Source: Mytilus trossulus (lineage: Eukaryota). Taken from it: a stretch of DNA of 64,000 bases. Shown here piece by piece: positions 36,588 to 62,974 of this stretch; position 1 is the stretch's first letter, and every line of letters starts with the position of its first letter. The notes beneath the pieces are model-generated. The model was not told the origin of the DNA and searched no databases. It was given only the letters and a program-made list of their open reading frames with translations. The DNA is taken from the NCBI RefSeq assembly GCF_036588685.1, contig NC_086379.1, positions 15,872,001 to 15,936,000 on the forward strand, written 5' to 3'. A program made the translations under genes and the position numbers.

Positions 36588-36637
36588 ACACATTTATTTT
36601 AAAAACATTTGTTGGCATGAAACGGGTTATTTTCTTC

Positions 36638-42494: not shown

Positions 42495-45400
42495 TCATCT
42501 TTCATGTAGCCTGATCATCGTTATTTCCGATGATATCTTGGTTTCATTCTTTATGTGTTCAGCTAAATCAAAGTCATTAACTTTTCTGTCAGCTATATCT
42601 ATTTCGTATTTGGATCTATTCAGTCTCTCAAAAATAGCCGGGAGAATTACGACAATAGAACTAGTAACCATAGAAACTCCTGCAAAGTAAAATCCGGATT
42701 GATATGCGCCGAACTTGTCTGTCAAAAATCCTATAAAATAAAATAAAAAAAATCATAAATCGAATAGATACTCGTCGTTTAAAAACTAGAAGATTGTGTA
42801 TATTGATGTCCTGTATCAAAATTAATGTCCATTTCAATCTTTCCATTGTATTTGAGGCTTTACCGAAATCTAGTCGATAACCTAGTACAATATATTACCT
42901 CACAATCAATTGCGGTCACAAAATCTGATGAAAATGTTTTAGGTAGTGTTTTCCTGGTTGTATCGAGTGTTTATATTGTTACTGTTCTTTTATTCTTGGT
43001 CATTAGAGAAAAGTACATTTCCTTGTCTGATTATCTCAGTACTGGAATTTACTAGAAAAATCATTAAACACATTTTAACAGACATTAAGCCTTATTGTCA
43101 ATCAATTCATAAAAGATGTATCATTGTGATGACACTGAAACATACACAGCGCATTGCACGAGGACGAAATTATCCAGTTATTACATCAAGCAAAACCAGT
43201 ACTAAAGAATCAAGCAATAAAAAAAAGAAAACATACTTGAGTCAGTAATGGGTATAAATAGATTAACATGTAAATGCTATTTATATAATATGAGTTGTTT
43301 AGTTTTTTTAATTTGATCTAGATTACATACCTGCCATAGGTGGACCAACGAGGAATCCAAGACCTTGAAATAACAGAGCTATACCACATGAGCTGGCCAG
43401 ATTCTCTATTCCGAGAAGGTCCACTAAAATAACTGGTGGCAACACATTGTATGAGCCGCCAGCAAATAATCCTAAAATACAGGAATATAACACAAAGTGC
43501 CAATATTGGCTGGCAAATACACAACATATGCTAGAAACGCCACTTGTGAAAATAGCAATCACATACAAGTTCTGTCGATTCTTCTTAAAAAACTTAATGT
43601 CACATAAAATTCCAAGCATTATACGTCCAATAATATCCGCTATCCCAGATATAGACAAAAGGATGGCTGCATCCTTCGATCTTATACTGAATTGCATTGC
43701 CAAGGCTGGCAACATAATAGATGCAGGTGAGTGGCCAAGCGTTGCTAACATAAAAGATATACATAAACAAAGAAAGCGATTATTTGTCAGTAATGTGTAA
43801 TCGAAATAATCTTTTACAGTTTTGTTTTTTTCAATAATTGATTGTCGGCACTTTTTATCATTGTTGTCATTGATCAGTTTCTCTGATATAATTGTATTAG
43901 AAATTTCGTTGACTGATTTGTTTTGAATCCTTTCCTGAACAGCAGCCACAGCGAAATCAGTCGATTCATCATTTGTAAATACTTTATTTGAAATCCCTTC
44001 CAAACTAGATACTTTGTGCTTTGCGCTTTTGGGGACAGAAAGAAATAAAGATCCACAGACACACATATTTAACATTACACCGCTCATAACCAGCATTGTT
44101 CCTTGGAAACCGTATTTCCTCAGGAGAAATTCCAAAAGTGGTGCAAAAATAAAAGTCCCTACTCCTGACCCAGCTGTTGCAAGACCGTTAACGAGTGATC
44201 TTCTTTTATCAAACCATCTCCCTACTATTATAATACTTGAGATGTTTGCCAATGACTTTCCAATACCTAATCAAACATATATGATATATTGCATTAAAAT
44301 GACAAAAGTATGCTAGCTGAACCAGGTTCAAAGCAAAGATAGTTGTTTTCGCATATTCATTTATAAAAACGTATAATCCTTGAAAGAAATAGCACTTGTA
44401 TTTTGTAATTCTGCAGAAAAAAATCTATCTGATGTTAGTTGTTTTGGATTAAGCTTTGTAAAAGTCGTTTCTTTTTTGTACATCGAATCTTTTGATGTCT
44501 TCGTTTTGACAAACGTGACAATATCAACTATCTTATTTTAAATTTCTGATGTATCAAGCAAGAACATATCTATTGCACTATCGTATGGTGTTAAGAATGT
44601 TGTTGCGCGAAGATTATGTACAAAGCACATAAAACCTAATGGCATATTTTTATCGCACATTCACTCCACAATTTTTATATCCATACTTAATTACAAAGAA
44701 TAATATTTTTTAAAACGAGATTATATACGATTCCAATGAAATTTTCAGATTATTTTTTTTTAACGATTTACCTGTTTATTTGGAAAAGGAAACGCATTTT
44801 TCAGAACGATAACTTTATCTTGTAAAGTACATTCATATTTACGGATGCTTCATGCAATGATAGCCAAGTTTAATCCCAAAACAAATCGGTGTATACAATA
44901 TGTGGACAATGAAGTGTAGATCTGGAACAATTAAACTGTGCGGAAATGAACAAATAATATCAAAATAATGCTATAATATCAAACAGATCAAAGATGAGAT
45001 GGACAAATCTATGTTTGTAAACATTGTAAATGAAGGCAAAGTCCTTCAACCTTTTTTTGGACAGTACCATTAAAGACATAAATAATCAAACAGAAATTGT
45101 GAATAAATAGAACTCGAAGCTAGAAACATGTGCTATGAAATGCACCAACATCGTTCTAAAAGGATATAATTATGACCATAAGTACAGATCATGAGAGTCA
45201 AACGTATATCAAATTTGAAACATAACAGTAACAATACATTCTATCATTCTTAAACATTGTTCTGAGTGTGGGCCTTTTATACGAAGAACTTTTAATTTAA
45301 AGACTGTTTCTTTTATCTGATATAAAAAAAAATAAACTTGCGATGAATACATACATGTAAATATCAAGATGTAAATACGTTAATCCCACATATCTACTTA

Positions 45401-48089
45401 TATGCACTGATCATGGGTTTTTAAGCTTTTCCATTAAACACGTACATTTGACGTAACCACCACTAAATAATACACATTTTGTATCATGTGTATCATGCAC
45501 ATTGTGTGTAACATAAAGAACCTTAAAGTATAAATGATGGGTGTGGGTAATTTCTAACTGAGACTTTTAAGTTTGACACGTGGGCATAGTCTTTCTTCAA
45601 CACTATACCATACGAAAGTGTTCAACATCCAATTAAAGAAAATATAAGAAATTGAACTGAAATATCACGCAACTGCCAATGAAATAAACCTTACTGATTT
45701 AAAGAGTTATATTCTAAGTTCTAAGAACAAAAAGTACTATTACAATTTGAAATTACCTGCTACAAGGCCGTAAGTTAAAAACATATACTCTATTTTAGGC
45801 ATAAATCCTGTGGTGAGCCAACCAATAGACGTAAACACCCCTCCGACTACAGTCATTGAGCGACAGGAAAACCTTGTGCTCAACGCACTTGAGAGTGGAC
45901 CTGAAAAGTATAATTTTATTTGTTAACGGTATTGCGAAATAAGAATCGTTCATTTTGATGAATTTCACTTTTTGAATATATTTCTGTTTTCAATAAAGTT
46001 TAAATATTTCGAATAGAATATATACATATTAAAGCTTTAGGAAAATGTTGTTTGTGCTGTTTTTAGACACTTCTACTACGAAATTTGTTTTACATGCACA
46101 CGTATAAACATTGTGGTTTTTATCCAACGCAATCATAGGTTTGAACGTAGTTTTCAATTTAGACTCGATTATAAAAGTAATATATATATATATTGACAAT
46201 CGTATGATAAATAAAAAAAAATAGAATAAACTGTTCTTTTTCAATTTATATAATACAGAACTAATCTTACTGAAAATTAAGGCCATTGCGTTAGCCACGG
46301 AACCAACCCAAGCTGTTTTACTTGCATTCTCGTGGAATAATTCCAATAATTCAACGTATAATACACCAAATGTGTTTACAGCACCTCCGATTAGAAGGTG
46401 AATTATCACTGCACCTGTAAACCAAATAAATGTGTATAAATTTATGAATACACAACTATTATGTATAGATGTAACAGTTGTAAATCATATTTGAATTTGT
46501 AAGTAGACCGTTTGTTTTCCCGTTTGAATGGTTTTACACGTCCAGTAATTTTTGGGACCCTTTATAGCTTGCTGTTCGGTGTGAGCCAAGGCTCCGTGTT
46601 GAAGACCGTAAGTTGAGCTATAATGGTTTACTTTTACAAATTATGACTTGGATTGAGAGTTGTCCCATTGGCACTCATTCCACATCTTGTTATATCTATC
46701 CATCAGTTTCCTGTTTTTATTTTGGCAGGTTTACATTATAACTCTAGTTAAAAAAAGTATTGATTTTTATTATGTTTCTTACACAGAACATACATGTATT
46801 CGATAGTCATTCATTGTATTCTAGAAACGAATTTATTTGCGTAAAAAAAGTAGGTCAGTGTAACTGGCACTTTATTCATTAACTTCGATACCAAAACAAA
46901 CTTAACGTGACGGTACCCAAATTGCACCTATTTTGACAGTTTTTTCACCTACGGTTTTTTATGATCAAGACAAACATTCTATTCTGTGTTTATTTTGTAG
47001 CCGTATAGTTCTTGATAATATAGGTACACCAATTTGATTTTTAATCCATTGCATCCATGCTTAAATTCACACCATTAAAAATCAAATAACAGATATTTTT
47101 TTTTTTTTTTCAAATATTTAGAACAATTTGACTTTAGTACAAACTCACTATTCATTTTTTTCTAAATTGATGTTTGTGACATTTTTTTTTGTTCATTTTT
47201 AAAAGATGACTTTTTGTGAACGTCGCATGGTGGCGTTTACGTAAGTTTTTCTTTTCCAGTGAAAGTTTCATCTGTTGATATAAATTGTGAACGTTTAGTG
47301 TATATTTGAATATTTTAACCTATTTTGTAAGACGTGTATATTGTCCAATAATCCAAATACAAATTGTTTAGTCTCAAAGAAAAAAATTAAGAGTTTCTCA
47401 GCTGTTTATGTTCAATAGATGCAATTTGGGTACTCGGTGCAATTTGGGTACCGTGAAGTTATACACCAACTTCTTTGTTGTTCTCAAACAGCTTGTTAAG
47501 CCAGATGTTGAAAACGTTTATTCAATTTGATGTCACTGACATTTTTTTTTATGCTGCCACTTTATGCTGTTACGATTGTCAGAATTCATTGGCCGTATAC
47601 ACTTTGTCGTTAGAAAAAGCCTTGTTTGTGACGTTGAAATCATAACGCACATATTAATCTATGACGTCATTAATGAATGCAGGTTCGCGGAACTTTAGAG
47701 TCGTTCTTTCTAAATTCATTGTTATTGATTTTAATCCAAAATGGTTCATTCAAAACATTCCAAGAGATGCAGTATAAATGGAACAACCATAGTTGTCTCA
47801 AAATAATACATTGTAGTTGTACTAGTTTCTAATTGGATATAGAAATGCCTCGCAAAGCCTCACATTCTATCTGTTTCTTAGTCTTGTACAAGTCCATTTA
47901 TATATTGAGTCAAAATATAGTTATTCTAAAGTATTTTATTATTTCGATTTAAAATATTCAACTTATATATATTAATTGTAAATAAATATTCTTACCCACT
48001 ACTACAATCCATCCCCAACCTCCATCAGGAGCTTGTACGTCGTGATTTGCATCGTTATCTTCATCTTTCTTTTCAAAAGGTTTGGACAT
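42495..48089 (-). CDS. SLC16/MCT-family monocarboxylate transporter (MFS), about 517 aa
   Basis: Exons 48089-47996, 46414-46271, 45900-45757, 44266-43331 and 42730-42495; all introns GT-AG and phase 1; total 1554 nt. Motifs PDGGWGW, WFDKRRSLVNGLATAGSGVG, GIADIIGR, GPPMAG. Confidence 0.92.
46905..47459. mobile_element. TA-flanked MITE in MCT intron 1
   Basis: TIR ACGTGACGGTACCCAAATTGCACC / GGTGCAATTTGGGTACCGTGAAGT; TA on both sides. Confidence 0.8.
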
Positions 48090-49365
48090 CACTCTGAAAG
48101 TTGTTTTAGCATGTATAACTATATTCAGCTGTTCTCGTGTTTTAGAATGTACAAGGAGCAATGGAAAATCTATTGACCGAGAACAATAGAACATTTAACT
48201 CTTATGAAAAAGTCGTGAAAATCAAATCAGTAATGCTGGTGATGATAGAGGCTAAAAGTTATTTCTAAACAGCATTGAATTTCGTACATTTAAAAGAAAT
48301 AATTTATCAAACTGTTTCTTTAGAAAATCATGTCTAAACAACATCTAAAGATCTTTCCGTTCAACAATTTTCGGAGTTTTCCACAAAGTACATTGCATGT
48401 TACAATTTTCACAAAATGTACCTCTTTCACATCTAAGTGTTCGAGTTCACCAGTTTGTCGGGTGAACGTTCAATATAGAAATATTGGTTTTCCGTGAATA
48501 ATACAGTTTAAAAGTCTGTCATTGCAGGTTAAACAAAATAGAAATGAATATTTTCATTAAATAGGTTATCCGTCCAAATTTTAAGAGAAAGTCGTCTTGT
48601 TTTTTTTTTGTACATATATTTGCGGTCTTCTCTATCAATTTCCATGCAATGTTTACATAAGGATAAGGACCGTTTTAATTTCATTGATATATTCACTTCA
48701 AAAGTATTAAATCTGTAATCTAGCTGCATACATGTACTGATAATTTGCAAGTTCTAGAGAAGTATACAGAGAGTAGAAAAAATATTTTGAAGTTGGTACT
48801 CCAGGATTATTTTCGCATAGCAATATTTTACACCAATTTTGTACCAAGCTCGTCGTTTGTTATTTATAGTAAATGAGAACATTAAATGGAAGTTTTATTT
48901 TTCCCTTTCTGAATTTAATTTTATTTTCACTATTAACAGAACTTTTATTCGTTAACTTATAATTGGTTTCAAGTTTTCAGTGTTTTCAATGATAACCTGA
49001 ATAGGGAACCTGTCAAGCGGTATTATATGGTTTTTATAATTTTATGCATCCTGCCAATTCGGTCATTCGTAATGTTCTTGTCTATCGTATTTGCTTGTGT
49101 GCTTTATGTTTTGAGTGTTTATATGCATTTTTTTTATATTTGTTTTGTTGACATATTTGTTACTTTTGTATTGATTAAGATTATAAAACAATGTTTACTG
49201 CTGTACCCCAATATTTGACATTTTTACCTTTTATGACTGTTTGTTTTGATCACACATCGTTATCAATATAATGGTATTTTATGGGACTGTCATACATGTG
49301 AGATGTTTCGTTAGCTATAAAGCTAGGCTTAATCCTCCATTTTCTACATAGGAGATGCCTGTTCC

Positions 49366-49755
49366 AATAGTTATCAAAGTACCAGGATTATATCTTAATA
49401 CGCCAGACGCGCGTTTCGTCTACATAAGACTCATCAGTGACGCTCAGATCAAAACAATTAAAAAGCCAAACAAATACAAAGTTGAAGAGCATTGAGGACC
49501 CAAAATTCCAAAAAGTTGTGCCAAGTACGGCTAAGGTAATCTACTCCTGGGCGTAAGAAAATCCTTAGATTTTCGAAAAATTCAAAGTTTTGTAAACAGA
49601 AAATTTATAAAAATGACCATATAATTGATATTCATGTCAACACCGAAGTGCTGACTACTGGGCTGGTGGTACCCTCGGGGACGAAACGTCCACCAGCAGT
49701 GGCATCGACCCAGTGGTGTAAATAGTTATCAAAGTACCAGGATTATATTTTAATA
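49366..49755 (-). mobile_element. Retrozyme: 355-bp unit plus a terminal partial repeat, with an intact type I hammerhead
   Basis: AATAGTTATCAAAGTACCAGGATTATAT occurs at 49366 and again at 49721 (period 355). Non-coding. Confidence 0.9.
49400..49443 (-). ncRNA. Type I hammerhead ribozyme (intact)
   Basis: Minus strand GCGTCA-CTGATGA-GTCT(tatgt)AGAC-GAAA-CGCGCG-TC^TGGCGT; predicted cleavage between 49406 and 49405; palindromic minimal stem III. Confidence 0.9.
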
Positions 49756-50082
49756 ATCCAAATACAAATTGTTTAGTCTCAAAGAAAACTTTTAGGAATT
49801 TCTCAGCTGTTTTTGTTCAATAGATGCAATTTAGGTACTCGGTGCAATTTGAATACCGTGACGTTATACACCAACTTCTTTGTTGTTCTCAAACAGCTTG
49901 TTAAGCCAGATGTTGAAAACTTTTATTCAATTTGATGTCTCTGACATTTTTTTTTATGCTGCCACTTTATGCTGTTACGATTGTCAGAATTCATTGACCG
50001 TATACACTTTGTCGTTAGAAAAAGCCTTGTTTGTGACGTTGAAATCTTAACGTACATTTTAATCTATGACGTCATTAATGAA
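49752..50082. repeat. 331-bp duplicate of MCT intron 1 segment 47347-47677
   Basis: Colinear, about 16 substitutions counted by eye. It includes the right end of the intronic MITE and that MITE's unique flank. Confidence 0.9.
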
Positions 50083-50468
50083 AGTCAGGAATACGACAGT
50101 TGCTTTCCATTCGTTTGATGTGTTTGAGGTTTTGGTTTTGCCATTTGATAAGGGACTTTCTGTATTTAATTTCCCTTGGAGTGCAGTATTTTTTTATTTC
50201 ACTTTTTTTTTAACACAACGTCTATATATTCCAACACCATTCATTATTGAAATATGTATGAAACATTAGATGCGATTCAAATTACCTTTGATTTTTATTT
50301 TTCTTTGCTTTTGTTAACAAGTTAAATTTCTAGTATTATTTAAAATTTGTAACTTGTTTACAAGGCAGGATCGTGGATTCACGCATATGAGTAAAACATT
50401 TTCTCGTCCCTGCCTTATGAATCAGTTGTGTGATGTATTTACATATGAAAATATATGAGCTATAAACC

Positions 50469-50913
50469 TAGAATCATATTCAAAACAGTGTGGTCCTGGC
50501 CATTGATTGACGAAATAAATTATCACATTGACTGGGACAGATTAGGTGAACGTTTGTCGGTAACAATCACTGCTCACTATGTACTTGTTAAAGACACTGA
50601 ATCTGTGGGGTCACCAAAGGTTCTCAACACCTAAATAAAGCAATTCGAAAAACGAATCCGGAATAATACTATGTGTTGATTTATATTAATAATATAAATC
50701 AAAACATAAAGGTTATTCCTGAATAATTTTTCGAATTATTTTATTATTAAAGGCGGTAAGAACCTTTGGTGACCCCACAGTTTAAATTCTATAATAAGTA
50801 AGAAGTGAGCAATGGTCGTTACAGACAAACGTTCACCTAATCTGTCCCAGTCAATGGGATAATTTAGGTCGTCAATCAATGGCCAGGACCATACTGTTTT
50901 GAATATGATTCTA
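50469..50913. mobile_element. Foldback MITE with about 170-bp imperfect TIRs and TAG...CTA ends
   Basis: TAGAATCATATTCAAAACAGT...GGGGTCACCAAAGGTTCT is mirrored by AGAACCTTTGGTGACCCC...ACTGTTTTGAATATGATTCTA. No clear TSD. Confidence 0.85.
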
Positions 50914-52890
50914 TTTATACAATAAGGCTCATGACTTTTTGTATTAGTTTTTTCGAAAGATTTGTTTGTTAAAACAGTCGCATTACCATAAAACCCATGT
51001 TGTTGTGTGTGTTCTTGATGTTTAAATTTCGTATTATAACATTTTCGTTCTTGGTGTTTCAACGGGGATGTGACTCTCCAGACAGGTGTAATTTTACATT
51101 TCTCATTCTATATTTTTCAGCCTTTGTACGAAACAATTTAAGTAATTTGTATGTAATATTTGCTTCAAATAAATGACCGTTAAAAAAAGAGAGACGAATA
51201 TACCAAAGGGACAGTCAAACTCATAAATCTAAAACAAACTGACAACGCCAAGGCTAAAAATTAAAAAGAAAAACAGAAAAACAATAGTACACACGACACA
51301 ACATAGAAAACTAAAGAATAAACAACACGAACCCCATCAAAAACTAGGGGTGATCGCAGGTGCTCCGGAAGGGTAGTTAACGTTGATCTCTCTGCAGTCA
51401 AAGTGGTAAACTAATACGTTATACTCAGTGTCACCACGGAAAATTGTATCTGGCCATTCTTCTAGCACAATTATGTAAATTTTTACTATCGCTATCATAT
51501 AATTGTAAATCCTAATCAAATTCTGCATAGTGTTCTTTTAATAGTAACAGTGCGAATGAAATATATTAAAGATATAACGAGACAGCAACAATAACAACCA
51601 AAAAAAAAACTAAAGTTTTAGTCTGAACGATCAATCCACTCATCAATAATTGCATTTTAGTATAACAAAAGTACAAAACAAATTAATGTATGTCAATTGT
51701 CAATTGATTAATCCATAGCAAGCTGTCATATGTCCATTTATTTTCTAAATACTGATATATTTTCAAACATATCAATTTATTTATATATTAAACATGTTAA
51801 ATGAATGTATTATATTTAGTTTGTATGTACATAACACATATAATATGAATAAAAATAAAAATAAAAGTTATACACACAAAACAATACACTTTAAGTTATT
51901 TTTTTAAATGTTAACATTGATATGAAATATTAAATGTTCATATAGTTATGAACCTAAATATTGTTCTTTATCATATATAATTATCTAAAATTTAATTCCA
52001 GGCAGAACCACAACCACATAAAATTGTTACAATGATTATCCTTATTAAGTGTACGAATTCCCGTTTCGTCTGACATCTAGACATTCATTGTTAAGTTCTT
52101 TAGTGCAGACAAGTTTTCATTAGTGACTATGTGTCTCAAATAGACGACTTATAATACATATTTAACTTGTTTCAAAAAATGTTCACATGTTTCACATCAT
52201 TATAATCTGCACTTATGTTTTAATAAGAACCACAATGAATGATTGATCCAGGACTTGTGTAATAGGACTTTCCACCTTTTGCAATTCAACAATATACATT
52301 TAGATGCTAGAGATCGTATTACCCAATGTCGACATTCCCACGAATTATTTACGTACTTATATCAAATAACTTTAAAACGTTGATTAAAATGCAAATTTAT
52401 CGAATCAACAAACACAAAAAAGTGTACAAAAAGATACATGTTTTTTTTTTAAGATTTGTCTTGACTTAATAATTTTCAACTAGCTAAACTTGCTCAACTG
52501 TTTTAAATTCACGACAACTTTCTTTTGCTTAAATGGGAAGGTGCTAATAATATTTATTTTACTATATGCAATTTTGTTATATTATCCATTCATTTCATTG
52601 GACACGTGCTATTTGTTAAGTTTCACTAACCCTTCATACGCACCACCCAACCATAGCAACATGTGATATTATTTTCAACGGGTGTTAATGCCTAAAATTA
52701 ACTTCGGTATTTTAAACAAATTTCTTAAACGTCTGCAATTTTTTTGAATTGAGGTACTCGTTTGATATGTCTTAGACCTTTTGCAATCAGTCCACAATTT
52801 TCAAAAACAAAACTTTTAAATAACATTATACTCTAGTTGCAAGACTGTGTATGGCATATGTTGTTCGATTTTTAAATTTGGTCTTTCAAT

Positions 52891-55472
52891 TTACATGTCA
52901 TCAATGTTCAAGATTGGTGTAAATATCTCCTCGAGCACATTTTCTATCTCTCTGCTCTGTATGGACTGTAGGATCTTTCTTAGCCAGGAATCGATGCCAT
53001 GTTGTCCACAATAAAAGGGAATATTGAGGTATTTTCGTATAAAGTTGTACATTTTCATTGTGCCTGGAATAAGATAGTACAATATTTAAGAGAATGTATC
53101 GAAGAATGTATGAGATGACTATTTCTGTCGCAATATCATATCGAACATATTGAAATTTTACGACAGACCTAGATCATTTAAATAGAATTTGAACGGTAAT
53201 GTGTAACAATTAAATTTGAGTATTAATTCTAATGTTTAGCCCACTTCTGGGTAAGTCTTCAAAAAGTTAGCTTAGTATTAAAAAATTTAGAAAAATATCA
53301 AATTTGACTGGAAAATATTTAAAATGTTTAAATAAATTGATAACAACAACCTTTTTGACACCGCCACATTTTCACGTGCCTTTTCCATTCTCGTCAGTAT
53401 TTGTCGTATGTCAAATTTTTTTTTTTCCGTTTTTTAGATATATGGGTTTTGATAGCAGTATACTAATGTTTTGGTTTAATTAATTTTAACTTTTTAAGAC
53501 TCGGTACGATTTAGAGTGTTACAAATAAAAAAACACACCTGTGATTGTTGGAGACTGCATGTTCGCTTTTAATGTATTTGGCTTATTTTTGTCGCTTGGT
53601 TGCTGTTCCATAATTGACGCTTATCCCATATCTACTTTTAATCATATTAATGCTGTCTATTCATGTGAATTTCACCATTAATTTTAGTTTATCATTTTTA
53701 ATAATAGAGAGGCTTTTATCTCCCCATCGTTATGATTTTATATAAGACAATATAAATGTTTATAATCTACCTTTTCCCATCTGTTTGGCGGCATCTATAT
53801 TTCCATTACATGCATTTTTGTAAAGGGTACACATTCTATTTGAGAGACGTTCCCCAGCTTCTGTGTGTTCTTTTCCTGATAGGAAATTTGTCTCCTTCGA
53901 AGCCTTTTGTTTAGATAAAAACAGCAAGTCATACCATTCTATCTCCTTTAAAGTCGACGTAATGTCGAGATATTCTTGCGCAAGTAAGTCAATTTCTTTA
54001 AGAACGAGATTTCGGAGGTGACGTAGATCGATGGCCTGTGCAGTCAGAAGAAGTAGGTTTGCTGTCATCATTTGTACAATTTCAACTGCCTCTGAGGTGA
54101 ATCGCGCGGAGACTAAAGCCATTGAATTGATTGCCTGGTTGTGGCATTCTGCACTCAATATATGATTACTCATAGGGTTGACAAAATGATCGAGTTCAGA
54201 CATGTAAGAGGTCATTGCTATATCACAGCCTTTGAATCCGAAATCAACATTGATGTCACATCCACTTAGATTCGGTGGCAATCCGAAATTCAGCTTATCA
54301 TTTACAACCTCTTCGAATAGAGCAAATTGTAGCTTCCCGCAAATTCCAAGCGCTTGTCGTGTTTGGTCCATTGCGATAGACATAGTTTCTCCCTGGAAAT
54401 TAGCGTTATGTAAAACTGTATCTGTGCGATGGTCAATTAGTGGATTATCATTTGCGCTGTTAAGTTCAATTGTTATTCTTCTGCATGCTTCGTTAAGTGT
54501 TTCAACAGCTGGTCCAAGCCATTGTGGTGAACTCCGCACACTATAACGATCTTCCTTAAGAACTCCACATTTGTCTGGCAGGTTCATGTCTAATGTCGTG
54601 ATAGCTAACTTACTACCTTCTAGAATTGACAACATATTCCTTGCTATTTCTTTCTGACCTATATGAGGAAGACAGTTGTGGATAAGAGGATGGAAGCTCT
54701 CTGTTCTTCCTTTCACTGCTTCAATTGACAGTCCGGTACATACTTGGGTAAGAAGAAGAAGCAAATTTGCGTCATAAAGTGTTGGAGCCGAGAACCCGGC
54801 AGTGAATGAACATGAATTTATTACCCCTAAGCCTTCCTTTGGGCCAAATACAATCGGTGATATACCAGCCTCTGCAAGAGCTTGTGGACAAGACATTATT
54901 TTCCCTCCTTTAAACACTTTCATATCTTCTCTTCCTATCATGGTTGCTGCAATATAACCTAGAGGCATCAGATCTCCGCTAGCACTAACAGATCCACGCA
55001 GTGGAACTTCGGGCACAATATCGTTATTGATAAGATCAGTCAGAGTTGTGACCACTTCAGCACGTACTCCAGAATATGCTTTTGCAAGACAATTTGCCCT
55101 CGTTACCATTGCAGCCCTAATCATTTCTAAAGGAAACATTCGACCCATTCCAACATTTACAAGACGGATCAACGCCATCTGCACATCTTCAAATTTACAC
55201 GAACGCACGTCGGAACTTCCACCGAAGCCTGTGTTTATCCCATACAAAACAAGTCCTTTTTCTAACTTCTTTTTTAGATACACTGCATTTGCTGTTAACT
55301 CTTCCATGGATATTTCAGCAATTTTTACTTTCATGCTTGGCTCAATGCTGACTGCAAGGACTTCTGGTATGGTTAAAGTAGTTCCATCGAGCGTGATACT
55401 GTCTAACGTGTTTTTCCTTTTTTGGATGAATGTTAAAGTTGTTCTTGCATGAGAATTATCCATTTCTGTCAT
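52891..55472 (-). CDS. MIO-dependent aromatic amino-acid ammonia-lyase/aminomutase of PAL/TAL/PAM type, about 624 aa
   Basis: Coding exons 55472-53771 and 53063-52891 (phase-1 GT-AG intron; 1875 nt including stop). Motifs YGINTGFGG (catalytic Tyr), PLRGSVSASGDL (ASG/MIO, 54975-54983), KEGL..IN, DRYSVRSSPQWLGP, NDNPLID, NFQG, GFKGCDIAM, SAECHNQAINS, and C-terminal MYNFIR..L.I. A splice acceptor at 55491-55492 with an in-frame stop before the ATG suggests a 5' UTR intron. Confidence 0.93.
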
Positions 55473-56179
55473 TTTCCCAAATTAAAGAACCTGCGTTATG
55501 GATAGATTATTTTACATGTTTTACATCATACGAAAAAAACTATGTCTTTTTAATAAGATAGAAACATGAATTACAAATACAGTATTAATTCCGTTAAAAA
55601 TAATACAGAGGCTTCTTTCTTAGTAATGCCTAAGAACTATAAAAAATTAATTCATTTGTTTGGTATAATAGTAGTTCTACGTTTGTAGTTAACGTTTGAA
55701 ACGTTTTCAAACATTAAAAATGATTTATCGACAGCCCCGATAATATTATATGATAATTTTGAGTGCCTTTTGAGACCTTCGCAAAATATCCATCCTAGTC
55801 TGACTTCAGACATTAACATACAAACAAAACATTACACTCGAAATCTCAAAATGTCCACGAATTAGAAAGTAATTGAGATTGATTTAAAAAATACTATAAA
55901 AGGTCTACCATTTATAACTAAAGCCAAACATAGACGATACTCTTGGTTTTGGACAGACCGTCATAAGAATATGTGACATGCCTATACTACTTACCCCTAC
56001 CCGCCCTGTTGACCTCACCACCCCATCCTCACTTGTAATAATGATCAGAGTATAAGAATAGGTAAATAAAATATTGTTATATTCTATTACATTTGCATGA
56101 TGTCGTTCCAAATAAGCCACTTTACGTTAAACATCTGTCCATCTTTCCATCGCATTTATTACAGAAGGATATTTAATAA

Positions 56180-57174
56180 AGGCAGTTGCTTTTTTGCCGG
56201 CTCCGGCAAAATAGCAATTTATATAGAGTTTTGCTATTTTTCCGGTCTTAGTTCAGATTTTTAATCAAGACTATATGAAATTTTTTTTTTAAGGAAACTA
56301 TTTATGCACAAATGATATATGTGGCTAGATGTCAATACTAGTAACCTTTTTGTTCGCCTTGCGTTCCTAGTCATTCAATTTTAGTTAACTGCACCCATTT
56401 AATTACATCTACTGTGTTTTTGTTAGATGTATGTTAAGCCTTTTTCAACTGATTTTTATAGTTCGTTCTTATGTTGTACTGTTATACCACTGTCCCAGAT
56501 TAGGGGAGAGAGGTGTGGATCCCGCTATAACATTGATATACATTTTTCGTACATAAATAAGGCCGTTAATTTTCTCGTTTGAATTGTTTTACATTGTCAT
56601 TTCCGGGCCTTTTATAGCTGATTATGCGGTATGGGCTTTGTTCATTGTTGAAGGCCGTACGGTGACCTATAGTTGTTAATTGATGTGTCATTTTGGTCTC
56701 TTGTGAAGAGTTGTATCATTGGCATTCATACCACATCTTCTTTTTTTATATGAGATTGTTGGGTGTTACTTTTTGTTTCAAATCTTATATATTATTTTTT
56801 TTTTGTTTTAATCAGAATGTCGATTTTTTTATATGGGTCCGTATGCTTTGCTTATGCGTATTATATATTTTTATAAAGAATTTTTTGTATACCTCCTATT
56901 AAAGATAAAAAGAACTAGTATCAATTTCAATATTTTACTTTTTAAAAAAGACATATTTTTAGAGACTAAAGAATATCAATTTTAATTTGCACGTTTGGTA
57001 TAAATGTTTAAAGAATACTTAGTTGTAGAGCGATTTCTTATTGAAGTGTATGTTTCTATATTTTTTCTTTTCTTAATTTCTATACTTCTATTTTAATCTT
57101 AACTAAGACTGGCAAAATAGCATAACACTATATAAATCGCTATTTTGCCGGAGCCGGCAAAATAGCCACTGCCT
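56180..57174. mobile_element. MITE with about 75-bp TIRs and TAA TSD (PIF/Harbinger-like) carrying nested repeats
   Basis: AGGCAGTTGCTTTTTTGCCGGCTCCGGCAAAATAGC... / ...GCTATTTTGCCGGAGCCGGCAAAATAGCCACTGCCT; TAA at 56177-56179 and 57175-57177. Confidence 0.8.
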
Positions 57175-58824
57175 TAATGAAAACAAACTATCTAGCTTTC
57201 GATAGAAGAAATCGGGTATCTTACACAGAGCAGTTGATCAATTATATATAGTTTTTATGTTTTGTGCAGCAGTTGATTTTATGGATTAAAAATGTATGCA
57301 ATATAATATGAAATAAAAGACACACGGATGAAATGTCAAAGTATAAGAAAATTGATTTTAATTTAACAGCAAAGCAAATAACTGAAATATTGCTTCTTTC
57401 TTTTTTTTAAGGCACAATTAACAGGTAAACTGCGAAAGCAATCAACTGACTTAAATTGTGATGATTCGAATTTTGTTATAATTTTGCCAACATGTAGTTG
57501 TTGTTTCTGATCAGAAAATTATTTTCAGTGAACTATGAAATAAATATACAGATCAGGGGTTGTCGTTTGTTGATGTGGTTCATAAGTGTTTCTCGTTTTT
57601 TTATATAGATTAGAGCGTTGGTTTTCCTGTTTGAATGGTTTTACACTAGTCATTTTTGGGGTCATTTATAGTTTGCTGTTCGGCGTGAGACAAGGCGCCG
57701 TGTTGAAGACTGTACTTTGACCTATTATGGTTTACTTTTTACTAATTGTGACTTTGATGGAGAGTTGTCTCATTGGCACTCATACCACATCTTCTTATAT
57801 CTAAATACTGAATTTCATTTCCAAAAATACAAAATCCGGTAAATGCTAACTACACAGACCTTATGTTTTAATAACGGTGCAAACTTTTATTAAGACTTGG
57901 ATAAGCTTCAACTGTCCTTCGAAGTTCGTTTTGTATCCATAATTAGTTAGGATTACTATTTTCTATTACACTACAAAAAAAATAGCAAACAGACATTTAC
58001 CTATTTGATTAATCGTCCTTTTTGTTTACCTATGAAAGTCGTTTCCAATTCCTTTTTTTAAGTTTTGAAACTTACAAAAAATATACTAAATGGACATGCA
58101 CAAAAATAAATCATTCCGGAATTATAAACAACAGACGTAGAAATGGGAGGTTTAGCTAGCTATAAGACAAAGTTTAACACACAATGCTCTGAATTTCCAC
58201 TTGTTCCGTTGGTTAATAATGCTTGATTTGCCTGTTATTATGGACTTTCTCTTTTTGAATTTACCTTGGAGCTCGGTATTTATGTCATATTTTTTCCATT
58301 CGGTTTTTCCTTGATAGGATTTATGATTCTTTAAGATATAAACCAGCAAGTGATTGGCTAGTCCTATAGAACGAAATGTGATCTTCTTCTTGTATATTTA
58401 TTCCTTTGCTGTTATGAATAGTAAAAGGACACAACAAAACATCGTTTAAGATATATCTAACAATATAACTGCTGAGATTTTAACTATATGTTTTCTGTAA
58501 ACAAACCGGAACCAATTTAACTGCACCAGATGCACATTTCTTAAGTGATTCTCGAGACCAAAATATATTAAAATTCATAACTTGTAAAAATATTTAAGAG
58601 CTGACCAAGACAAAATATGTAGCCGAAGCCGGGCAAGGAATCAGAGTTTTGCATTAGGGAGATGTTTCCCTGTATTTTTTGAATTATCTAAATATCCAAA
58701 TGAAATTAATTCATCTCAACTAAATCTAACTACATTCAAAGTCAATAGGGACCGTTGTCTATTTTAAACATTCATGTTTGAATCTCACAATCGTCATGCC
58801 AAATTTAATGACAAACTGGGCGAC

Positions 58825-59060
58825 ATTTTCTACCCTTCCTTCTGGTGGTGATGATACGATAGCTCCTTCTTATGAAATTTGCACCTCTCTTTGTTTCGGT
58901 TCCCGCCTATATACAGGGACTCACATTTCAATGATAGTTTTTATTTCTAAAAAACTTTTACAGCAGGATATAGATATCACAATTTGGTTATTACGTTTAC
59001 TAAATGATATTGAAAATAGATGGAATTATTGTTTGAAGTATAATGTCAATGGCAGAAATT
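58825..59060 (+). pseudogene. Highly decayed Penelope-like RT C-terminal fragment
   Basis: GGDDTIAPSY...ISKKLLQQ resembles DGDVPLSPSY...ITEKLLHQ in the RT at 35628-36587. Confidence 0.4.
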
Positions 59061-60183
59061 AGATTAAAAAGTGTTATACAACACCAATCTTTTAACGGCA
59101 ACATTATTTATATCCTAATATGTTAGGGATTAAATTTAATCTGGTTGACCATATTTTAACTGATGACTTACACATTGAGAATGGATAATTGTATTTGATA
59201 CTTCTCAACTAAAAACGCCTTAATTATCAGTTAGAACAATGACTGGTCAATTTGGAGTGACAATAATGTGTCCATTTAGAGTAACATGTCTTTCTGCGGA
59301 CTGCTACGTAACCATGTGAACAAGATCTTTCAAATTCGGCTAGACGCTCTTCTCTAGCACAACGTATATTCATATTAAATCAACATGGCCTAATAGGCAG
59401 ACCAGTTCACAGTTAATTCGATGCAGACAACAGATCCCAAATAAATTTAAGAAACATGAAAAAGTTTACTGCTACACATTTGTGAAATACTTTTAAACCA
59501 ACGTTTTAGATAAACTATCCTTCTGAACATGTTTGGCTAGTATCAATGGTTGAGAAATGGAGAAACAATTTTGTTTATTTGTCCATATTTTGAATATTTA
59601 TAATGTCATAGCCAATTTGCCTTAAAGTTTCCTGTCTCAGACTGTAATTACTTTTAATTTTCATTACAGTATTTTTTTTATATATATATATATATATACC
59701 AAAGCAATAAGAGGATTCAGGTTTGAAGATAACCAATAAAGAAGTACAATATTAAGCGCTTTGGTTTTCTAATATTCAATAATAAATCGTACCTTGCAGA
59801 TTATTCGAACTGTTTTCTCCTGAGCTAGAAAATGTTTGCACCTAACCTTTTACAATGTTTTATTATGTTTGTATTATGTTTGTAACTAGGGTTCATTATA
59901 TGGTCAAACCTATCCTATTGAAAGGCACCTTTTTTTTCTAGAATTCAAAATTATTTCATGAAAAGGACATTTCTTTATAAATGTTCCCGGCAGATATTCG
60001 GCAAACTCACAATAGTGCATTATTCATTCTGTACGGTGTTTACTTAGGGGCGTTGTTAATGGCTGGTGTTGTGATTAAATATTAGTATGGCATCTCCTCT
60101 TGATAATACTTTCAAAGACATTGGAACTCTTTTGGCTTCTGCGTTTTATTTATTTATAATCTATCTTAGACAACAATTCAATT

Positions 60184-60533
60184 GAGAGCCGTGGTGTAGT
60201 GGTTAGTGCATCGGACTACTAACACAAAGGTTCCTGGTTCGATTCCCGTTTGGGATGAAAATTTCAGGAACTCAATTTTCGGCTCTCCCTTGACACCATT
60301 TGCGAGTATGGTCTTGAGGAAACGATGATAGTCCGTTGGACGGGGACGATAAATGGCTGACCCGTGTTAAGAGAGAGCCATATCTCTTGCACGTTAAAGA
60401 CACCCTTGTAGATTTCGAAAAAGAGTAGGCTAATGCCGCTACAAGGCAGCACTCGCACCCGCAAAGTGGAAAGGGATTAATATAAGTTGCAAAACTTGTT
60501 TCCCAATCCACTATAAATAAATATTTTTAAACT
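60184..60533 (+). mobile_element. tRNA-derived SINE with a Deu/Nin-like central domain
   Basis: Pol III A box TGGTGTAGTGG and B box GGTTCGATTCC; central GGACGGGGACGATAAA...GCACGTTAAAGA...AAGAGTAGG; AT-rich tail; possible TSD AACAATTC. Confidence 0.85.
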
Positions 60534-61268
60534 AACAATTCTCCGTAATATGTATTAACTGTTTGCCGTTGAAAGTTAATAATCTAATCTATCATAAAGA
60601 CATGTATATATAATATCGCCAAAGTTTACAGTTTAGCTTACTTTGGTCAGTTGCAAATTCTGGATTGATTGATTGATTGATTAATATCCAATATTTGTGT
60701 AAAACTTTTGAATTTCACAAATAAATAGATTTATCGAAAATGCATCTTTACAATCTTTACAAACAACCTGTTCGAAAATGGATTTTCTAAAATGTAAGCT
60801 TTAAAAACAAAACAATTATCGAAAAATTAAATTGTGATTTAGGGTCATTTTAAAATAAATCTCATGTACTAGTATACAAATCCGGCATGTCGATGGAGCA
60901 CATAACATAGTGATGCCACATTAAACATGTTTCAGCCTGATATATATGTTATTGGTTTACTGGATGTCAAATCATCCTCTACGACACGACAGTCGATGTA
61001 CATTTTTAATGTTTATAGTTTAAATTTAATTCGCTTCGAACAACAGATCCTAGATTATATTTTTTTTTTAAATTACTGCTACACACACATAACGGTTTTT
61101 GGTCAAACTATTTAGAGAAATTATTCGCTTGACCATGTTTGAATCGTGTGAATGATTACACCATGGAGTACTTATTTGGTTTCATTTGTCCATATTTTGA
61201 ATTTGCATCTGATATAATAGTCGTTTTTGTCATTTTTGTTTGTCTCTGTTATTGCTTTACGGTATTAA

Positions 61269-61860
61269 GGTGGTATGGGTGTCTTTCGCCATCTTGGATT
61301 GTAAAAAACAGAGAAACTAAGGTCCATATTTTCTATCAAGTTAGCAAAATTTGTTGCAGGAATGCAGATATTTAATGTAAATTTTCATTTAAAAGAACCA
61401 ATTTATAAGAATATAACTTAGAAATATTAATAGTTTTACAAGTGTTGATTATTTTTGGTTGTTTTTGAACATTTTCAAATTGGCAATTTAAGGGGAGGTA
61501 AATCTACAACAGTGCATTTTCTGAAGGACTCTACATGAAAATTTCCTATTTTGTATTTTATCTGGAAAAAACGTACGGTGACCCTATCTTTTCTTTTGAT
61601 ATTCTAAAAGCAATGTCTGAAAGCAATCTTTTCCTAATTTATTTTACAATTCTATCATTTTGTTTAGTTTCTATTCACAAAATTGTGTTTTTTTCTGTAT
61701 AATCCATACAAAATTTGTCATTTTGTCACAACCTGTAGCTTGAGAAAATGCACGGTGACCTATCATTTTTATAATATTTTTGAACATGTATCAATAGATA
61801 CTACATTTTGACAAAGTATGAACAAATTCTATCATTTTTATTTTAGACTCCCATACCACC
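61269..61860. mobile_element. Kolobok-like MITE with TTAA TSD
   Basis: TIR GGTGGTATGGGTGTCT / AGACTCCCATACCACC; TTAA at 61265-61268 and 61861-61864; internal repeats CGGTGACC..TATC and TTCTATCATTT. Confidence 0.85.
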
Positions 61861-62936
61861 TTAAATTTAAAAACAATACAGGAATAATTACAGAATAAGG
61901 TTTAAAAGAAACCGAAAAAGAAGTTAATATAAGTTATAAATAACAGATCATACCTTGTATGTTATTTGAACTATTCTCTCCTGAAATAGAAATAGATTGT
62001 GCCTTACCTTTTATCGTGCTCCTTTTATATGTTATTAACAGGGCGATGTTGGACAGTTTTCTAGTTGTTAATTACATTAATATAAAATTAGAGTAATGTT
62101 TTTATCATTAGGTAAAACCTGTCCTGTAAAAATGTACCGCGTTTTCCTAGAATTCAAAACGATGTCCTCGAACAGGAAATTCCTAGAAGTTTAAAATTTT
62201 AAACCTTTTCTTGATGATTGATGTGAATTAATATTCTTATTCATGTTAGTACGTAAACATTTTATATAATATATGGAGAAAAACAACAAAAAAGACCAGA
62301 ACAACATGATCCGGACCAGTAATTGACATGATTTAAGCATTATGTCATCGCATAAAAGTAAAAATTAATGGACATTAACTTTATCGTCATTTTGATTGGT
62401 AGTTATAACTATATTTACTCATGACCAGGATTTGCGAAGTAATATACTACATGTATATAAATTCCTTGTCGGTGATGTTCTTTAGTGAATGTAAGATACA
62501 CTTTAGAAAAATTCCAACGTTTAAGCTAAAACATAATCTTGGTAAACAGTTTGCTGTTACTATCACAGATCAACTTTAATCACAAGAAAAATAAAAATAG
62601 AAAATTTGACCAAATGGTCATAGATTTTCGGTCTCTAAAATTTTACTTTCATTTGTTTGGAAAATTGTTTAAATGCTTCGGTAAATTTGTTACACAAGCA
62701 TCTACACAAAATATAAATCCTGCACTAGTAGCACGATTTCAGTCTGAAACGGTCATTTTGGTCTGATCACATCTTGATTGACTGAATTTACTGCTAGAAA
62801 AATTCGTCAAGATATTTAAGATCGTTTAGTCGCCGTTCAGATCGATAGCCTCATCAGGTAAATCAGTTCGTTAAGACATGTCACGACGTAAAAAACTGAA
62901 TCGTCTAGCGGGTTGTTTGGACCCGTTAAGACCGTG

Positions 62937-62974
62937 CTGAGACTACTATAACACATGTGTTATAGTAGTCTCAG
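62937..62974. mobile_element. 38-bp perfect palindrome flanked by a 7-bp direct repeat
   Basis: CTGAGACTACTATAACACA|TGTGTTATAGTAGTCTCAG; GACCGTG at 62930-62936 and 62975-62981. Confidence 0.8.

What the first reader, a model, noticed from the sequence alone, without database searches (positions are those of the whole stretch)
52891..55472. PAL/PAM-type MIO enzyme in an animal genome: candidate domesticated horizontal transfer
Seen: an intact, spliced gene of about 624 aa with about 91% of the CDS in one 1.7-kb exon, set in host repeats. Established: the usual animal MIO enzyme is histidase (HAL; SH selectivity pair, GTVGASGDL, and an EDHVSM C-terminal motif), and PAL/TAL/PAM are plant, fungal and bacterial enzymes. 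This protein carries PAL-type motifs instead: TGFGGSSD, PLRGSVSASGDL, DRY..R.SPQWLGP, GFKG.DIAM, AECHNQAINS and a C-terminal Y.F.R..L. It is shorter than plant/fungal PALs (about 700 aa), consistent with a reduced shielding domain. Inference: an old HGT, or a patchily retained lineage, that gives this animal cinnamate-type or beta-amino-acid chemistry not usually attributed to animals. Automated database labels may already exist, but the function is probably untested.
Basis: partly seen in the sequence, partly recalled or inferred. Interest (0 to 1): 0.9.

Follow-up and report, generated by a model that had tools for sequence, protein, structure and literature searches.

The report
PAL-type ammonia-lyase gene in mussel
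A mussel chromosome carries an intact gene for an enzyme of the plant/fungal phenylalanine ammonia-lyase type, one copy of an old, unstudied family shared by bivalves, brachiopods and annelids, so these animals may make cinnamate- or coumarate-like acids themselves.

Summary
A two-exon, 624-codon gene lies on the minus strand (exon 1 55472-53771, GT-AG intron, exon 2 53063-52891). It encodes an MIO-family enzyme (PF00221, E 3.7e-136) that matches plant PAL and Taxus PAM (E 1e-113) far better than histidase (E 1e-50).

The genome is Mytilus trossulus. It has a separate multi-exon canonical histidase on another chromosome.

This is not a private or recent transfer. Orthologues occur in many bivalves, Lingula and many annelids. 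In an ML tree they form one clade (100/99) inside the eukaryote-type PAL group. That clade sits beside plants, fungi and protists, not nested in any of them and not in bacteria (best bacterial match 36%). Ancient HGT and patchy vertical retention cannot be separated: animals+fungi as one clade is not rejected (AU p 0.40).

The family mostly carries a TAL-like His at the specificity switch. The window copy has Leu-Val there and a Glu in place of a near-invariant active-site Gln, yet is otherwise well conserved (dN/dS 0.18).

A monocarboxylate-transporter gene follows the lyase at three paralogous loci.

The window copy sits in a spacer-less palindrome that may be an assembly artefact.

The scan noted this stretch before only on this same DNA.

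The parts
53771..55472 (-). Exon 1 of the PAL-type MIO enzyme gene (567 codons + first base of codon 568)
   Evidence: ORF. PF00221 455 bits. PDB best matches are Taxus PAM and plant PAL. TIGR01226 519.0 bits against cut-off 519.15.
53064..53770 (-). Single spliceosomal intron (707 nt, GT...AG, GC 0.28)
   Evidence: Sequence. The same intron position is found in paralogue P0004 at C7:22.79 Mb.
52891..53063 (-). Exon 2: last 57 codons (C-terminal helices with the Y.F.R..L motif) and TAA stop
   Evidence: Translation. The peptide is conserved in P0004, Mya, Dreissena, Lingula and P0011.
54975..54983 (-). Ala164-Ser165-Gly166, the triad that cyclises into the MIO electrophile
   Evidence: translation gives ASG. 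The column is invariant in alignments A1 and A2.
55158..55163 (-). Specificity-switch pair Leu104-Val105 (aligned to Taxus PAM Cys107-Leu108; by motif, PcPAL Phe137-Leu138 and RsTAL His89-Leu90)
   Evidence: Alignment, translation, clade-wide table.
54552..54554 (-). Glu307 at the near-invariant active-site Gln (Taxus PAM Gln319, PcPAL Gln348)
   Evidence: Gln occupies this column in 271 of 283 family members.
55242..55244 (-). Tyr77, inner-loop catalytic base (Taxus PAM Tyr80)
   Evidence: Invariant in A1.
54534..54545 (-). Tyr310...Arg313 (DRY..R motif; PcPAL Tyr351 and Arg354)
42498..48089 (-). Monocarboxylate transporter 12-like gene (5 detected exons) directly 3' of the lyase on the same strand
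   Evidence: MFS_1. P0296 [Mytilus trossulus], with the 3' exons 100% identical. Exon map by tblastn. The same tandem is present at two paralogous loci.
29603..64000 (.). One arm of a spacer-less inverted duplication that holds both the lyase and the transporter
   Evidence: blastn (99.8% over 19 kb, 96.5% over the outer 12 kb). Self reverse-complement of C7:15931996-15950648 at 99.64%.

Best explanation
This is a genuine nuclear gene of the mussel Mytilus trossulus. It is one recent paralogue of an old lophotrochozoan family of eukaryote-type (PAL-clade) MIO enzymes. It is neither a histidase nor a contaminant nor a recent transfer. Inferred mechanism: the protein forms the usual homotetramer. 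Ala164-Ser165-Gly166 cyclise into the MIO electrophile. Tyr77 on the inner lid loop and Tyr310 carry out the proton transfers, and Arg313 holds the carboxylate. An aromatic L-amino acid loses ammonia to give an aryl-acrylate (cinnamate or coumarate type). The monocarboxylate-transporter gene that follows the lyase then moves either that acid or the aromatic amino acid across a membrane. Most family members carry a TAL-like His at the specificity switch, so Tyr or DOPA is the likely ancestral substrate. The window copy (Leu104-Val105, Ile418, Glu307) has shifted towards a non-hydroxylated or otherwise different substrate. Origin: the gene was present before annelids, brachiopods and bivalves split. 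I rate an ancient transfer from a eukaryotic (fungus- or protist-like) donor into the lophotrochozoan stem at about 55%. Vertical descent with many losses gets about 35%.
For: Shown:
- Gene structure and host setting.
- Family and fold: PF00221; PAL/PAM best in the PDB at 4e-113 against HAL at 1e-50; TIGR01226 is the top NCBIfam model; the AF2 model of full-length paralogue P0004 (pLDDT 84.7) matches Taxus PAM and parsley PAL at TM 0.85.
- A separate HAL exists.
- Distribution: named hits come from 7 bivalve genera, Lingula and 8 annelid genera.
- ML tree (LG+C20, 71 rows): the animal clade has 100/99 support inside a eukaryote-type PAL clade with 100/99 support.
- The best match among 185,579 bacterial and archaeal species genomes is 36% identical.
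- Catalytic residues are present.
- Constraint: dN/dS is 0.18 against the paralogue at 22.79 Mb, and the window protein departs from columns that are >=97% conserved in the clade at only 4 sites.
- The lyase-then-MCT tandem is kept at three loci that diverged at dS 0.67.
Inferred: the reaction, the substrate class, the transporter's role and the origin.
Against: No RNA evidence could be obtained for this copy. Glu307 replaces a Gln that is present in 271 of 283 relatives. From my memory of the literature, that Gln contacts the substrate carboxylate in Taxus PAM, so canonical lyase activity may be weak or the substrate may differ. Lyase versus aminomutase cannot be told from sequence. The transporter link rests on adjacency inside one genus. 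The animal clade is not nested in any donor group, and animals+fungi as one clade is not rejected (AU p 0.398), so transfer is not demonstrated. Absence from other animal phyla was read only from best-hit lists, not from a systematic survey. The copy lies in a spacer-less palindrome, so the apparent copy number here may be inflated by the assembly.
Confidence: 0.6

Rival explanations
1. Vertical relic: the PAL-type gene was in the opisthokont (or earlier eukaryotic) ancestor. It survives in fungi and in lophotrochozoans, and every other animal and holozoan lineage lost it.
For: PAL-type genes reach down to chytrids and occur in deep protists (Spironema, Papus). The animal clade is as deep as the fungal and plant clades, with a stem of 0.44. 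Animals+fungi is not rejected (p-AU 0.398, lnL difference 3.6). Composition is fully host-like.
Against: It needs many independent losses. No named hit from deuterostomes, ecdysozoans, cnidarians, sponges, gastropods or cephalopods appears in the best 120 of two searches or among the 50%-identity representatives I identified. The gene has one intron against many short exons in the vertically inherited HAL.
Confidence: 0.35
2. The window copy is a decaying or neofunctionalised duplicate: it no longer makes aryl-acrylates because the active-site Gln is Glu, and part of the apparent copy number is an assembly artefact.
For: Q307E is unique to this subfamily (window, its 99.6% twin, P0001 and M. 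galloprovincialis P0003). A neighbouring copy has a 44-aa duplication of the MIO segment and a TAG stop, and P0001 at 25.74 Mb carries the same duplication. The palindrome has no spacer at 99.64% identity. dN/dS rises to 0.38 against the closest separate copy.
Against: The frame is intact over 624 codons. Only 4 conserved columns are changed, and three of those changes are conservative. The Glu allele is kept in a second species at 99% identity. All other catalytic residues are intact. The 0.38 value rests on few substitutions.
Confidence: 0.25
3. The enzyme is an aminomutase that makes a beta-amino acid (beta-Phe or beta-Tyr type), not a lyase.
For: The best solved relatives by sequence and by fold are Taxus phenylalanine aminomutase chains. 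Lamellibrachia orthologues carry an automated aminomutase label.
Against: Taxus PAM sits inside plant PALs, so this similarity is clade-level only. The TIGR04473 score is 383 against a cut-off of 1250. No sequence rule separates mutase from lyase.
Confidence: 0.12
4. Contamination or a recent bacterial or fungal insertion in the assembly.
For: The gene is almost intronless, and the enzyme type is unusual for an animal.
Against: It lies on an 85.4-Mb chromosome-scale contig between host retroelements and an intron-bearing host transporter. It has a GT-AG intron and host-like GC. Paralogues lie at four further sites of the same chromosome. Orthologues occur in more than 15 lophotrochozoan genera. 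No bacterial match exceeds 36% identity.
Confidence: 0.02

Closest known systems
Plant phenylalanine ammonia-lyase (e.g. Petroselinum crispum PAL, PDB 1W27/6F6T) and Taxus phenylalanine aminomutase (3NZ4/4BAA)
   Same: Same Pfam family and the same eukaryote-type clade. Identity is 41-43%. It has the ASG triad, the inner-loop Tyr, the DRY..R motif, the NDNP and HNQ motifs and the C-terminal Y.F.R..L motif. The model of the paralogue superposes at TM 0.85 over about 650 columns.
   Different: It is an animal host gene. The N-terminus is shorter and the shielding region is 45-55 aa shorter. The switch pair is Leu-Val rather than Phe-Leu (PAL) or Cys-Leu (PAM). Glu replaces the active-site Gln. 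TIGR01226 matches only profile positions 12-519 of 680. No phenylpropanoid pathway context is known; the neighbour is a monocarboxylate transporter.
Fungal PAL/TAL (e.g. Rhodosporidium toruloides PAL, PDB 1T6J/1Y2M)
   Same: A sister-level clade in the same eukaryote-type group. Animals+fungi as one clade is not rejected. Many animal members carry His at the switch, as bifunctional PAL/TALs do (the His rule is quoted in PMC9002059, seen).
   Different: The two are distinct clades, each with 100/99 support. The animal proteins are about 60-100 aa shorter.
Bacterial tyrosine ammonia-lyase (Rhodobacter sphaeroides TAL, PDB 2O6Y) and cyanobacterial PAL (2NYN/2NYF)
   Same: Same MIO chemistry. The His-Leu switch pair of RsTAL is the commonest state in the animal clade (48 of 82 rows have His).
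   Different: Only 33-37% identical, and they fall in the prokaryotic outgroup. They lack any shielding region. The window copy itself has Leu, not His.
Animal histidine ammonia-lyase (histidase)
   Same: Same superfamily and the same MIO cofactor. It is the only MIO enzyme usually credited to animals.
   Different: It is a separate multi-exon gene on contig C1 with the GTVGASGDL and EDHVSM motifs. The window protein scores 298 bits on hutH against a cut-off of 539.

Membership tests
MIO-dependent aromatic amino-acid lyase/aminomutase superfamily (Pfam PF00221) | Match to the family profile above the gathering score | tested here: met
   455 bits against 27.3; residues 33-485 cover profile positions 1-448 of 466.
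MIO-dependent aromatic amino-acid lyase/aminomutase superfamily (Pfam PF00221) | Ala-Ser-Gly triad that forms MIO | tested here: met
   A164-S165-G166 at 54983-54975. Invariant in A1 and A2.
MIO-dependent aromatic amino-acid lyase/aminomutase superfamily (Pfam PF00221) | Catalytic Tyr on the inner loop, the second Tyr, and the carboxylate-binding Arg | tested here: met
   Y77, Y310 and R313 align to Taxus PAM Y80, Y322 and R325.
MIO-dependent aromatic amino-acid lyase/aminomutase superfamily (Pfam PF00221) | Conserved active-site Gln (PcPAL Q348, TcPAM Q319, PpHAL Q277) | tested here: not met
   Glu307 in the window copy. Gln is present in 271 of 283 aligned members and in all other animal-clade subfamilies.
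Eukaryote-type phenylalanine ammonia-lyase (NCBIfam TIGR01226 equivalog) | Score at or above the curated cut-off | tested here: inconclusive
Exon 1 alone scores 519.0 against 519.15. Full-length relatives score 501-558.
Eukaryote-type phenylalanine ammonia-lyase (NCBIfam TIGR01226 equivalog) | Placement inside the plant/fungal/protist PAL clade in a rooted tree | tested here: met
   The clade of 55 rows has 100/99 support against 16 prokaryotic outgroup rows.
Eukaryote-type phenylalanine ammonia-lyase (NCBIfam TIGR01226 equivalog) | Phe-Leu pair at the specificity switch | tested here: not met
   Leu104-Val105.
Eukaryote-type phenylalanine ammonia-lyase (NCBIfam TIGR01226 equivalog) | Full C-terminal shielding domain | tested here: not met
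   140 aa follow the QAxDLR motif (83 in exon 1 + 57 in exon 2), against 168-200 in plants and fungi. The profile is matched only to position 519 of 680. Extra helices 499-552 remain in the model of P0004.
Eukaryote-type phenylalanine ammonia-lyase (NCBIfam TIGR01226 equivalog) | Deamination of L-Phe to trans-cinnamate | not testable with these tools
   Needs an enzyme assay.
Tyrosine ammonia-lyase | His at the specificity switch (RsTAL His89) | tested here: not met
   Leu104 in the window copy. His is present in 48 of 82 animal-clade rows, including paralogue P0004.
Histidine ammonia-lyase | hutH profile above the cut-off; Ser-His switch pair; GTVGASGDL and EDHVSM motifs | tested here: not met
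   298 bits against 539. The motifs are absent here but present in the separate gene on C1.
Taxus-type phenylalanine aminomutase (TIGR04473) | Profile score above the cut-off | tested here: not met
   383 bits against 1250.
Horizontally acquired gene | Recipient sequences nested within a donor clade with support | tested here: not met
   The animal clade joins plants, fungi and protists in an unresolved fork. The AU test does not reject animals+fungi.
Horizontally acquired gene | Patchy distribution among relatives of the recipient | tested here: inconclusive
   Named hits come only from bivalves, Lingula and annelids. This was read from best-hit lists, and many ENA and Logan members have no taxon.

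The most novel reading that the evidence does not exclude
Bivalves, brachiopods and annelids make aryl-acrylic acids (p-coumarate, caffeate or cinnamate type) or beta-aryl amino acids from Tyr, DOPA or Phe with their own PAL/TAL-clade enzymes. These enzymes would have been acquired or retained since before the Cambrian. They are repeatedly retuned at the specificity switch and are coupled to a dedicated monocarboxylate transporter. The window subfamily (Leu104, Val105, Glu307) would then act on a substrate that no characterised MIO enzyme uses.
Probability: 0.3. Interest if true: 0.85.

Novelty: new variant of a known kind. Interest (0 to 1): 0.62.

Why it matters
PAL and TAL are textbook plant, fungal and bacterial enzymes, and histidase is the only MIO enzyme normally credited to animals. 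This work shows a well-supported, conserved and expanding PAL-clade family in three animal phyla. That finding would:
- add a third major eukaryotic branch to PAL evolution and bear on the debate about where plant PAL came from;
- make directly testable whether marine invertebrates synthesise phenylpropanoid-type acids themselves, instead of obtaining them from diet or microbes, for example for quinone-tanned structures, UV screening or defence (uses that are speculative here);
- supply short, naturally varied PAL/TAL scaffolds with unusual pocket residues for biocatalysis;
- provide a rare animal example of a two-gene enzyme-transporter unit copied as a block.

Tried and rejected
The genomic context and taxon of unnamed ENA and Logan relatives, and synteny outside Mytilus, therefore could not be examined.
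- Exon 1 and exon 2 were used by reference, and the natural full-length paralogue P0004 served as proxy for the fold.
- HAL membership is rejected.
- Contamination or recent transfer is rejected.
- Co-variation of His104 with Thr418 as a two-residue 'hydroxyl-binding' signature shows only a trend (4-5 pairs against 1-2) and is not significant (median p 0.375).
- The protein atlas gave only generic PAL clusters.
None found a paper on PAL-type enzymes in molluscs, annelids or brachiopods. The MIO-evolution paper PMC9002059 mentions animals only for HAL. The metazoan HGT compendium PMC13342648 has no supplement held.
Full report
**1. Observation**

The minus strand carries an ORF at 55472..53760 of 570 aa. 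The sequence shows AAAAG|GTAGAT at 53771/53770 and TTCCAG|GC at 53064/53063. Exon 1 (55472-53771) has 567 codons plus one base. Exon 2 (53063-52891) completes a Gly codon and adds 56 codons and TAA.

The exon-2 peptide, which holds the Y.F.R..L motif, is conserved in the paralogue P0004 and in the Mya, Dreissena, Lingula and P0011 proteins. P0004 has its intron at the same place.

Exon 1 and exon 2 were used by reference. The natural full-length paralogue P0004 (80% identical) stood in where a whole protein was needed.

**2. Whose gene it is**

The window is G000:C7:15872001-15936000 on an 85.4-Mb contig of a 1.3-Gb genome. The transporter gene downstream is 'monocarboxylate transporter 12-like [Mytilus trossulus]', with its 3' exons 100% identical, so the host is that mussel.

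A 1903-aa BEL/Pao retrotransposon ORF lies at 7473-13184. GC is 0.41 in exon 1, 0.37 in a neighbouring host exon, 0.28 in the intron and 0.31-0.32 in the flanks. Contamination or a recent insertion is excluded.

**3. What kind of enzyme**

- Pfam gives Lyase_aromatic at 455 bits.
- Against the PDB, the best chains are Taxus phenylalanine aminomutase and plant PALs (4e-113 to 1e-95). Cyanobacterial PAL scores 1e-76, TAM and TAL score 1e-58 to 1e-45, and HAL about 1e-50.
- In NCBIfam the top model is TIGR01226 phe_am_lyase, at 519.0 bits against a cut-off of 519.15 for exon 1 alone. hutH scores 298 against 539, and Taxus PAM 383 against 1250.
- Full-length relatives straddle the PAL cut-off at 501-558 bits.
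- An AlphaFold2 model of P0004 (pLDDT 84.7, pTM 0.89) superposes on Taxus PAM and parsley PAL at TM 0.85 over about 650 columns.

The region after the QAxDLR motif is 134-146 aa in animal members (140 in the window gene) against 168-200 in plants and fungi. Cyanobacterial PALs and HALs are shorter still. The shielding region is therefore reduced but not absent.

**4. A separate histidase exists**

A PF00221 scan of the whole genome finds short-exon matches at C1:15648194-15659351. Their translations contain GTVGASGDL and EDHVSM, and their best PDB matches are HALs.

The same scan finds further PAL-type loci on C7:
- 15,956,301 (+), 99.6% identical in protein to the window copy;
- 15,993,255-15,994,744 (-), with stop codons;
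- 22,796,308 (+), which is P0004 / LOC134724796;
- 25,744,226-25,745,716 (-), which is P0001 / LOC134726297.

**5. Distribution**

Named relatives at 44-99% identity come from these taxa:
- Bivalves: Mytilus galloprovincialis, M. edulis, M. coruscus, Mya, Dreissena, Pinctada, Ruditapes, Mercenaria and Mactra.
- Brachiopod: Lingula.
- Annelids: Owenia, Capitella, Helobdella, Dimorphilus, Paralvinella, Ridgeia and Lamellibrachia.

No named hit from any other animal phylum, nor from gastropods or cephalopods, appears in these lists. That is an observation on best-hit lists, not a survey.

Many unnamed ENA entries are 565-590 aa long. That is the length a prokaryote-style gene call gives for exon 1 alone (the window's own call is 570 aa), and some have 620-aa cluster mates. 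This fits a shared gene structure.

Several Logan contigs of 2.0-2.7 kb encode uninterrupted 612-662-aa proteins that include the exon-2 part. This looks like spliced mRNA from other species. I could not check the run type, so this is inference.

**6. Phylogeny**

I took the best hits of the word-indexed search and the 150 best representatives of the exhaustive 1.84-billion-protein search. To these I added prokaryotic homologues with organism names from one genome per GTDB species (best identity 36%, Scytonema).

A FastTree of 153 rows and a careful IQ-TREE run (LG+C20+F+G4 PMSF, 71 rows x 608 columns) agree on three points:
- All eukaryote-type PALs form one clade (100/99) against the prokaryotic HAL/TAL/PAL-like rows.
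- Inside that clade there is an unresolved fork. Its branches are plants (100/100), fungi down to chytrids (100/99; identities), the protists Spironema and Papus, a clade of unnamed long multi-domain proteins, and one animal clade.
- The animal clade has 21 rows, 100/99 support and a stem length of 0.44. Its internal order roughly follows annelids, Owenia, brachiopod and bivalves.

The window gene sits with the other Mytilus paralogues (100/99).

Forcing animals and fungi together costs 3.6 lnL units and is not rejected (p-AU 0.398). The gene is thus old in Lophotrochozoa and is not nested in any donor. Ancient transfer and vertical retention with many losses both remain open.

I lean to transfer (about 55:35). 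The apparent absence elsewhere in animals would need many losses, and the gene has a single intron whereas the vertically inherited HAL has many.

**7. Active site**

The alignment to Taxus PAM (chain numbering minus 20 gives native numbering) yields these equivalences:
- Tyr77 = Y80
- Leu101 = L104
- Leu104-Val105 = C107-L108 (by motif, PcPAL F137-L138 and RsTAL H89-L90)
- Asn219 = N231
- Glu307 = Q319
- Tyr310 = Y322
- Arg313 = R325

The coordinates were checked by translation.

Across 82 animal-clade rows the switch residue is His in 48, Leu in 27, and Phe, Ser, Val or Ala in the rest. On a tree of the clade the His/non-His state changes at least 22 times.

His at this site is the classical tyrosine determinant. 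The His-to-Phe switch in the Rhodobacter TAL is quoted in PMC9002059. The family as a whole therefore looks TAL- or PTAL-like, with repeated retuning.

The window subfamily has Leu-Val, Ile418 (His-type members often have Thr there) and Glu307. It comprises the window copy, its twin, P0001 and M. galloprovincialis P0003.

Gln occupies position 307 in 271 of 283 aligned family members. From memory of the Taxus PAM engineering literature (mutant Q319M, the structure-guided regioselectivity work behind PDB 2YII), this Gln lies by the substrate carboxylate. A Glu there should change carboxylate binding. I did not test this.

Otherwise the window protein departs from columns that are at least 97% conserved in the clade at only three further, conservative sites (A87S, A421T, V438I). 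dN/dS is 0.18 against the 22.79-Mb paralogue (dS 0.67) and 0.38 against the 25.74-Mb copy (dS 0.03, few changes). The copy is constrained, not decaying, but its pocket is non-standard.

**8. Neighbourhood**

An MCT12-like (SLC16-type, MFS_1) gene follows the lyase on the same strand, with exons at 48089-42498. The same lyase-then-MCT order is found at C7:22.79 Mb (P0004 + P0298, 73% identical to the window's MCT) and at C7:25.74 Mb. The pair was therefore copied, and has stayed together, since a duplication with dS about 0.67.

Close homologues of this MCT (41-76%) are named only from Mytilus, Dreissena and Mya. In Mya they lie on the same 83.6-Mb contig as the lyase genes. Oyster and ark-shell MCT12s are only 25-30% identical.

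The products of MIO lyases are monocarboxylates, so a substrate or product transporter is a reasonable reading. It rests on adjacency only.

A side lead comes from the rotifer Adineta vaga. There a HAL-like gene (FUN_014988) and a monocarboxylate transporter (FUN_014986) are both among the most down-regulated genes in one experiment (PMC12220480).

**9. Caveat on copy number**

Window 41922-61033 matches C7:15969757-15950644 in reverse at 99.78%, and window 29603-41914 matches 15982140-15969801 at 96.5%. The segment C7:15931996-15950648 is its own reverse complement at 99.64%. Together these form a palindrome of about 35-kb arms with no spacer, centred at 15,941,322.

This may be a very recent inverted duplication or a fold-back or haplotype mis-join of the assembly. 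A third, direct copy (15,988,336-16,001,032; about 98.5%) carries a 44-aa duplication of the MIO segment and a TAG stop.

**10. Known or new**

Public records give only automated names: 'uncharacterized protein', 'phenylalanine ammonia-lyase 2-like' and 'phenylalanine aminomutase, partial'. Ten full-text searches found no paper that describes PAL-type enzymes in molluscs, annelids or brachiopods. The MIO-evolution paper discusses animals only for HAL. The library lacks most subscription journals, so prior description cannot be excluded.

I class this as a new variant of a known kind. It is a third eukaryotic PAL-clade lineage, in animals, with a shortened shielding region, a labile TAL-like switch, an odd Glu in this copy and a linked transporter.

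**11. Verdict**

Expression and synteny outside Mytilus therefore remain untested.

The scan's earlier notes on this stretch (s1-820527, s1-820732, s1-820733) all concern this same DNA.

Noticed in passing
window 29603-64000 and G000:C7:15936001-15982140: Spacer-less palindrome. C7:15931996-15950648 is its own reverse complement at 99.64%. The arms are about 35 kb (99.8% in the inner 19 kb, 96.5% in the outer 12 kb) and are centred at C7:15,941,322. It is either a very recent inverted duplication or a fold-back or haplotype mis-assembly. It doubles the lyase and the transporter genes.
   Followed up: partly
G000:C7:15988336-16001032 (L005, L006, L010, L098) and G000:C7:25744226-25745716 (L004, L007): Two further copies carry a 44-aa internal duplication, so the MIO segment (the stretch around VPLRGSVSASGDL) occurs three times. 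The 15.99-Mb copy also has stop codons. The 25.74-Mb copy is open and is RefSeq LOC134726297 (P0001).
   Followed up: partly
window 42498-55472; L099-L101 (C7:22.78-22.81 Mb); L102-L103 (C7:25.735-25.755 Mb): The lyase followed by an MCT12-like transporter on the same strand is repeated at three paralogous loci. The partners have diverged in parallel (lyase 80% aa, transporter 73% aa), so the pair behaves as one duplicating unit.
   Followed up: partly
window 7473-13184 (-): An intact 1903-aa BEL/Pao-type retrotransposon polyprotein ORF (Peptidase_A17, DUF5641, weak integrase zinc-binding domain).
   Followed up: no
proteins P0121, P0125, P0126, P0127, P0171 (not in the window): Unnamed proteins of 1265-2535 aa with one or two PAL domains form their own clade inside the eukaryote-type PAL group. 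One is labelled as a Candidatus Omnitrophota MAG on a 7.6-kb contig, which may be a mis-binned eukaryotic fragment.
   Followed up: no
animal-clade alignment, column of window residue 104 (55163-55161): The specificity-switch residue flips between His and non-His at least 22 times among 84 animal-clade sequences. This suggests repeated retuning of substrate choice among paralogues.
   Followed up: partly
PMC12220480, Table 2 (Adineta vaga): A HAL-like gene (FUN_014988) and a monocarboxylate transporter (FUN_014986), two gene numbers apart, are both among the 25 most down-regulated genes. This is a possible parallel lyase-MCT pairing in another spiralian.
   Followed up: no
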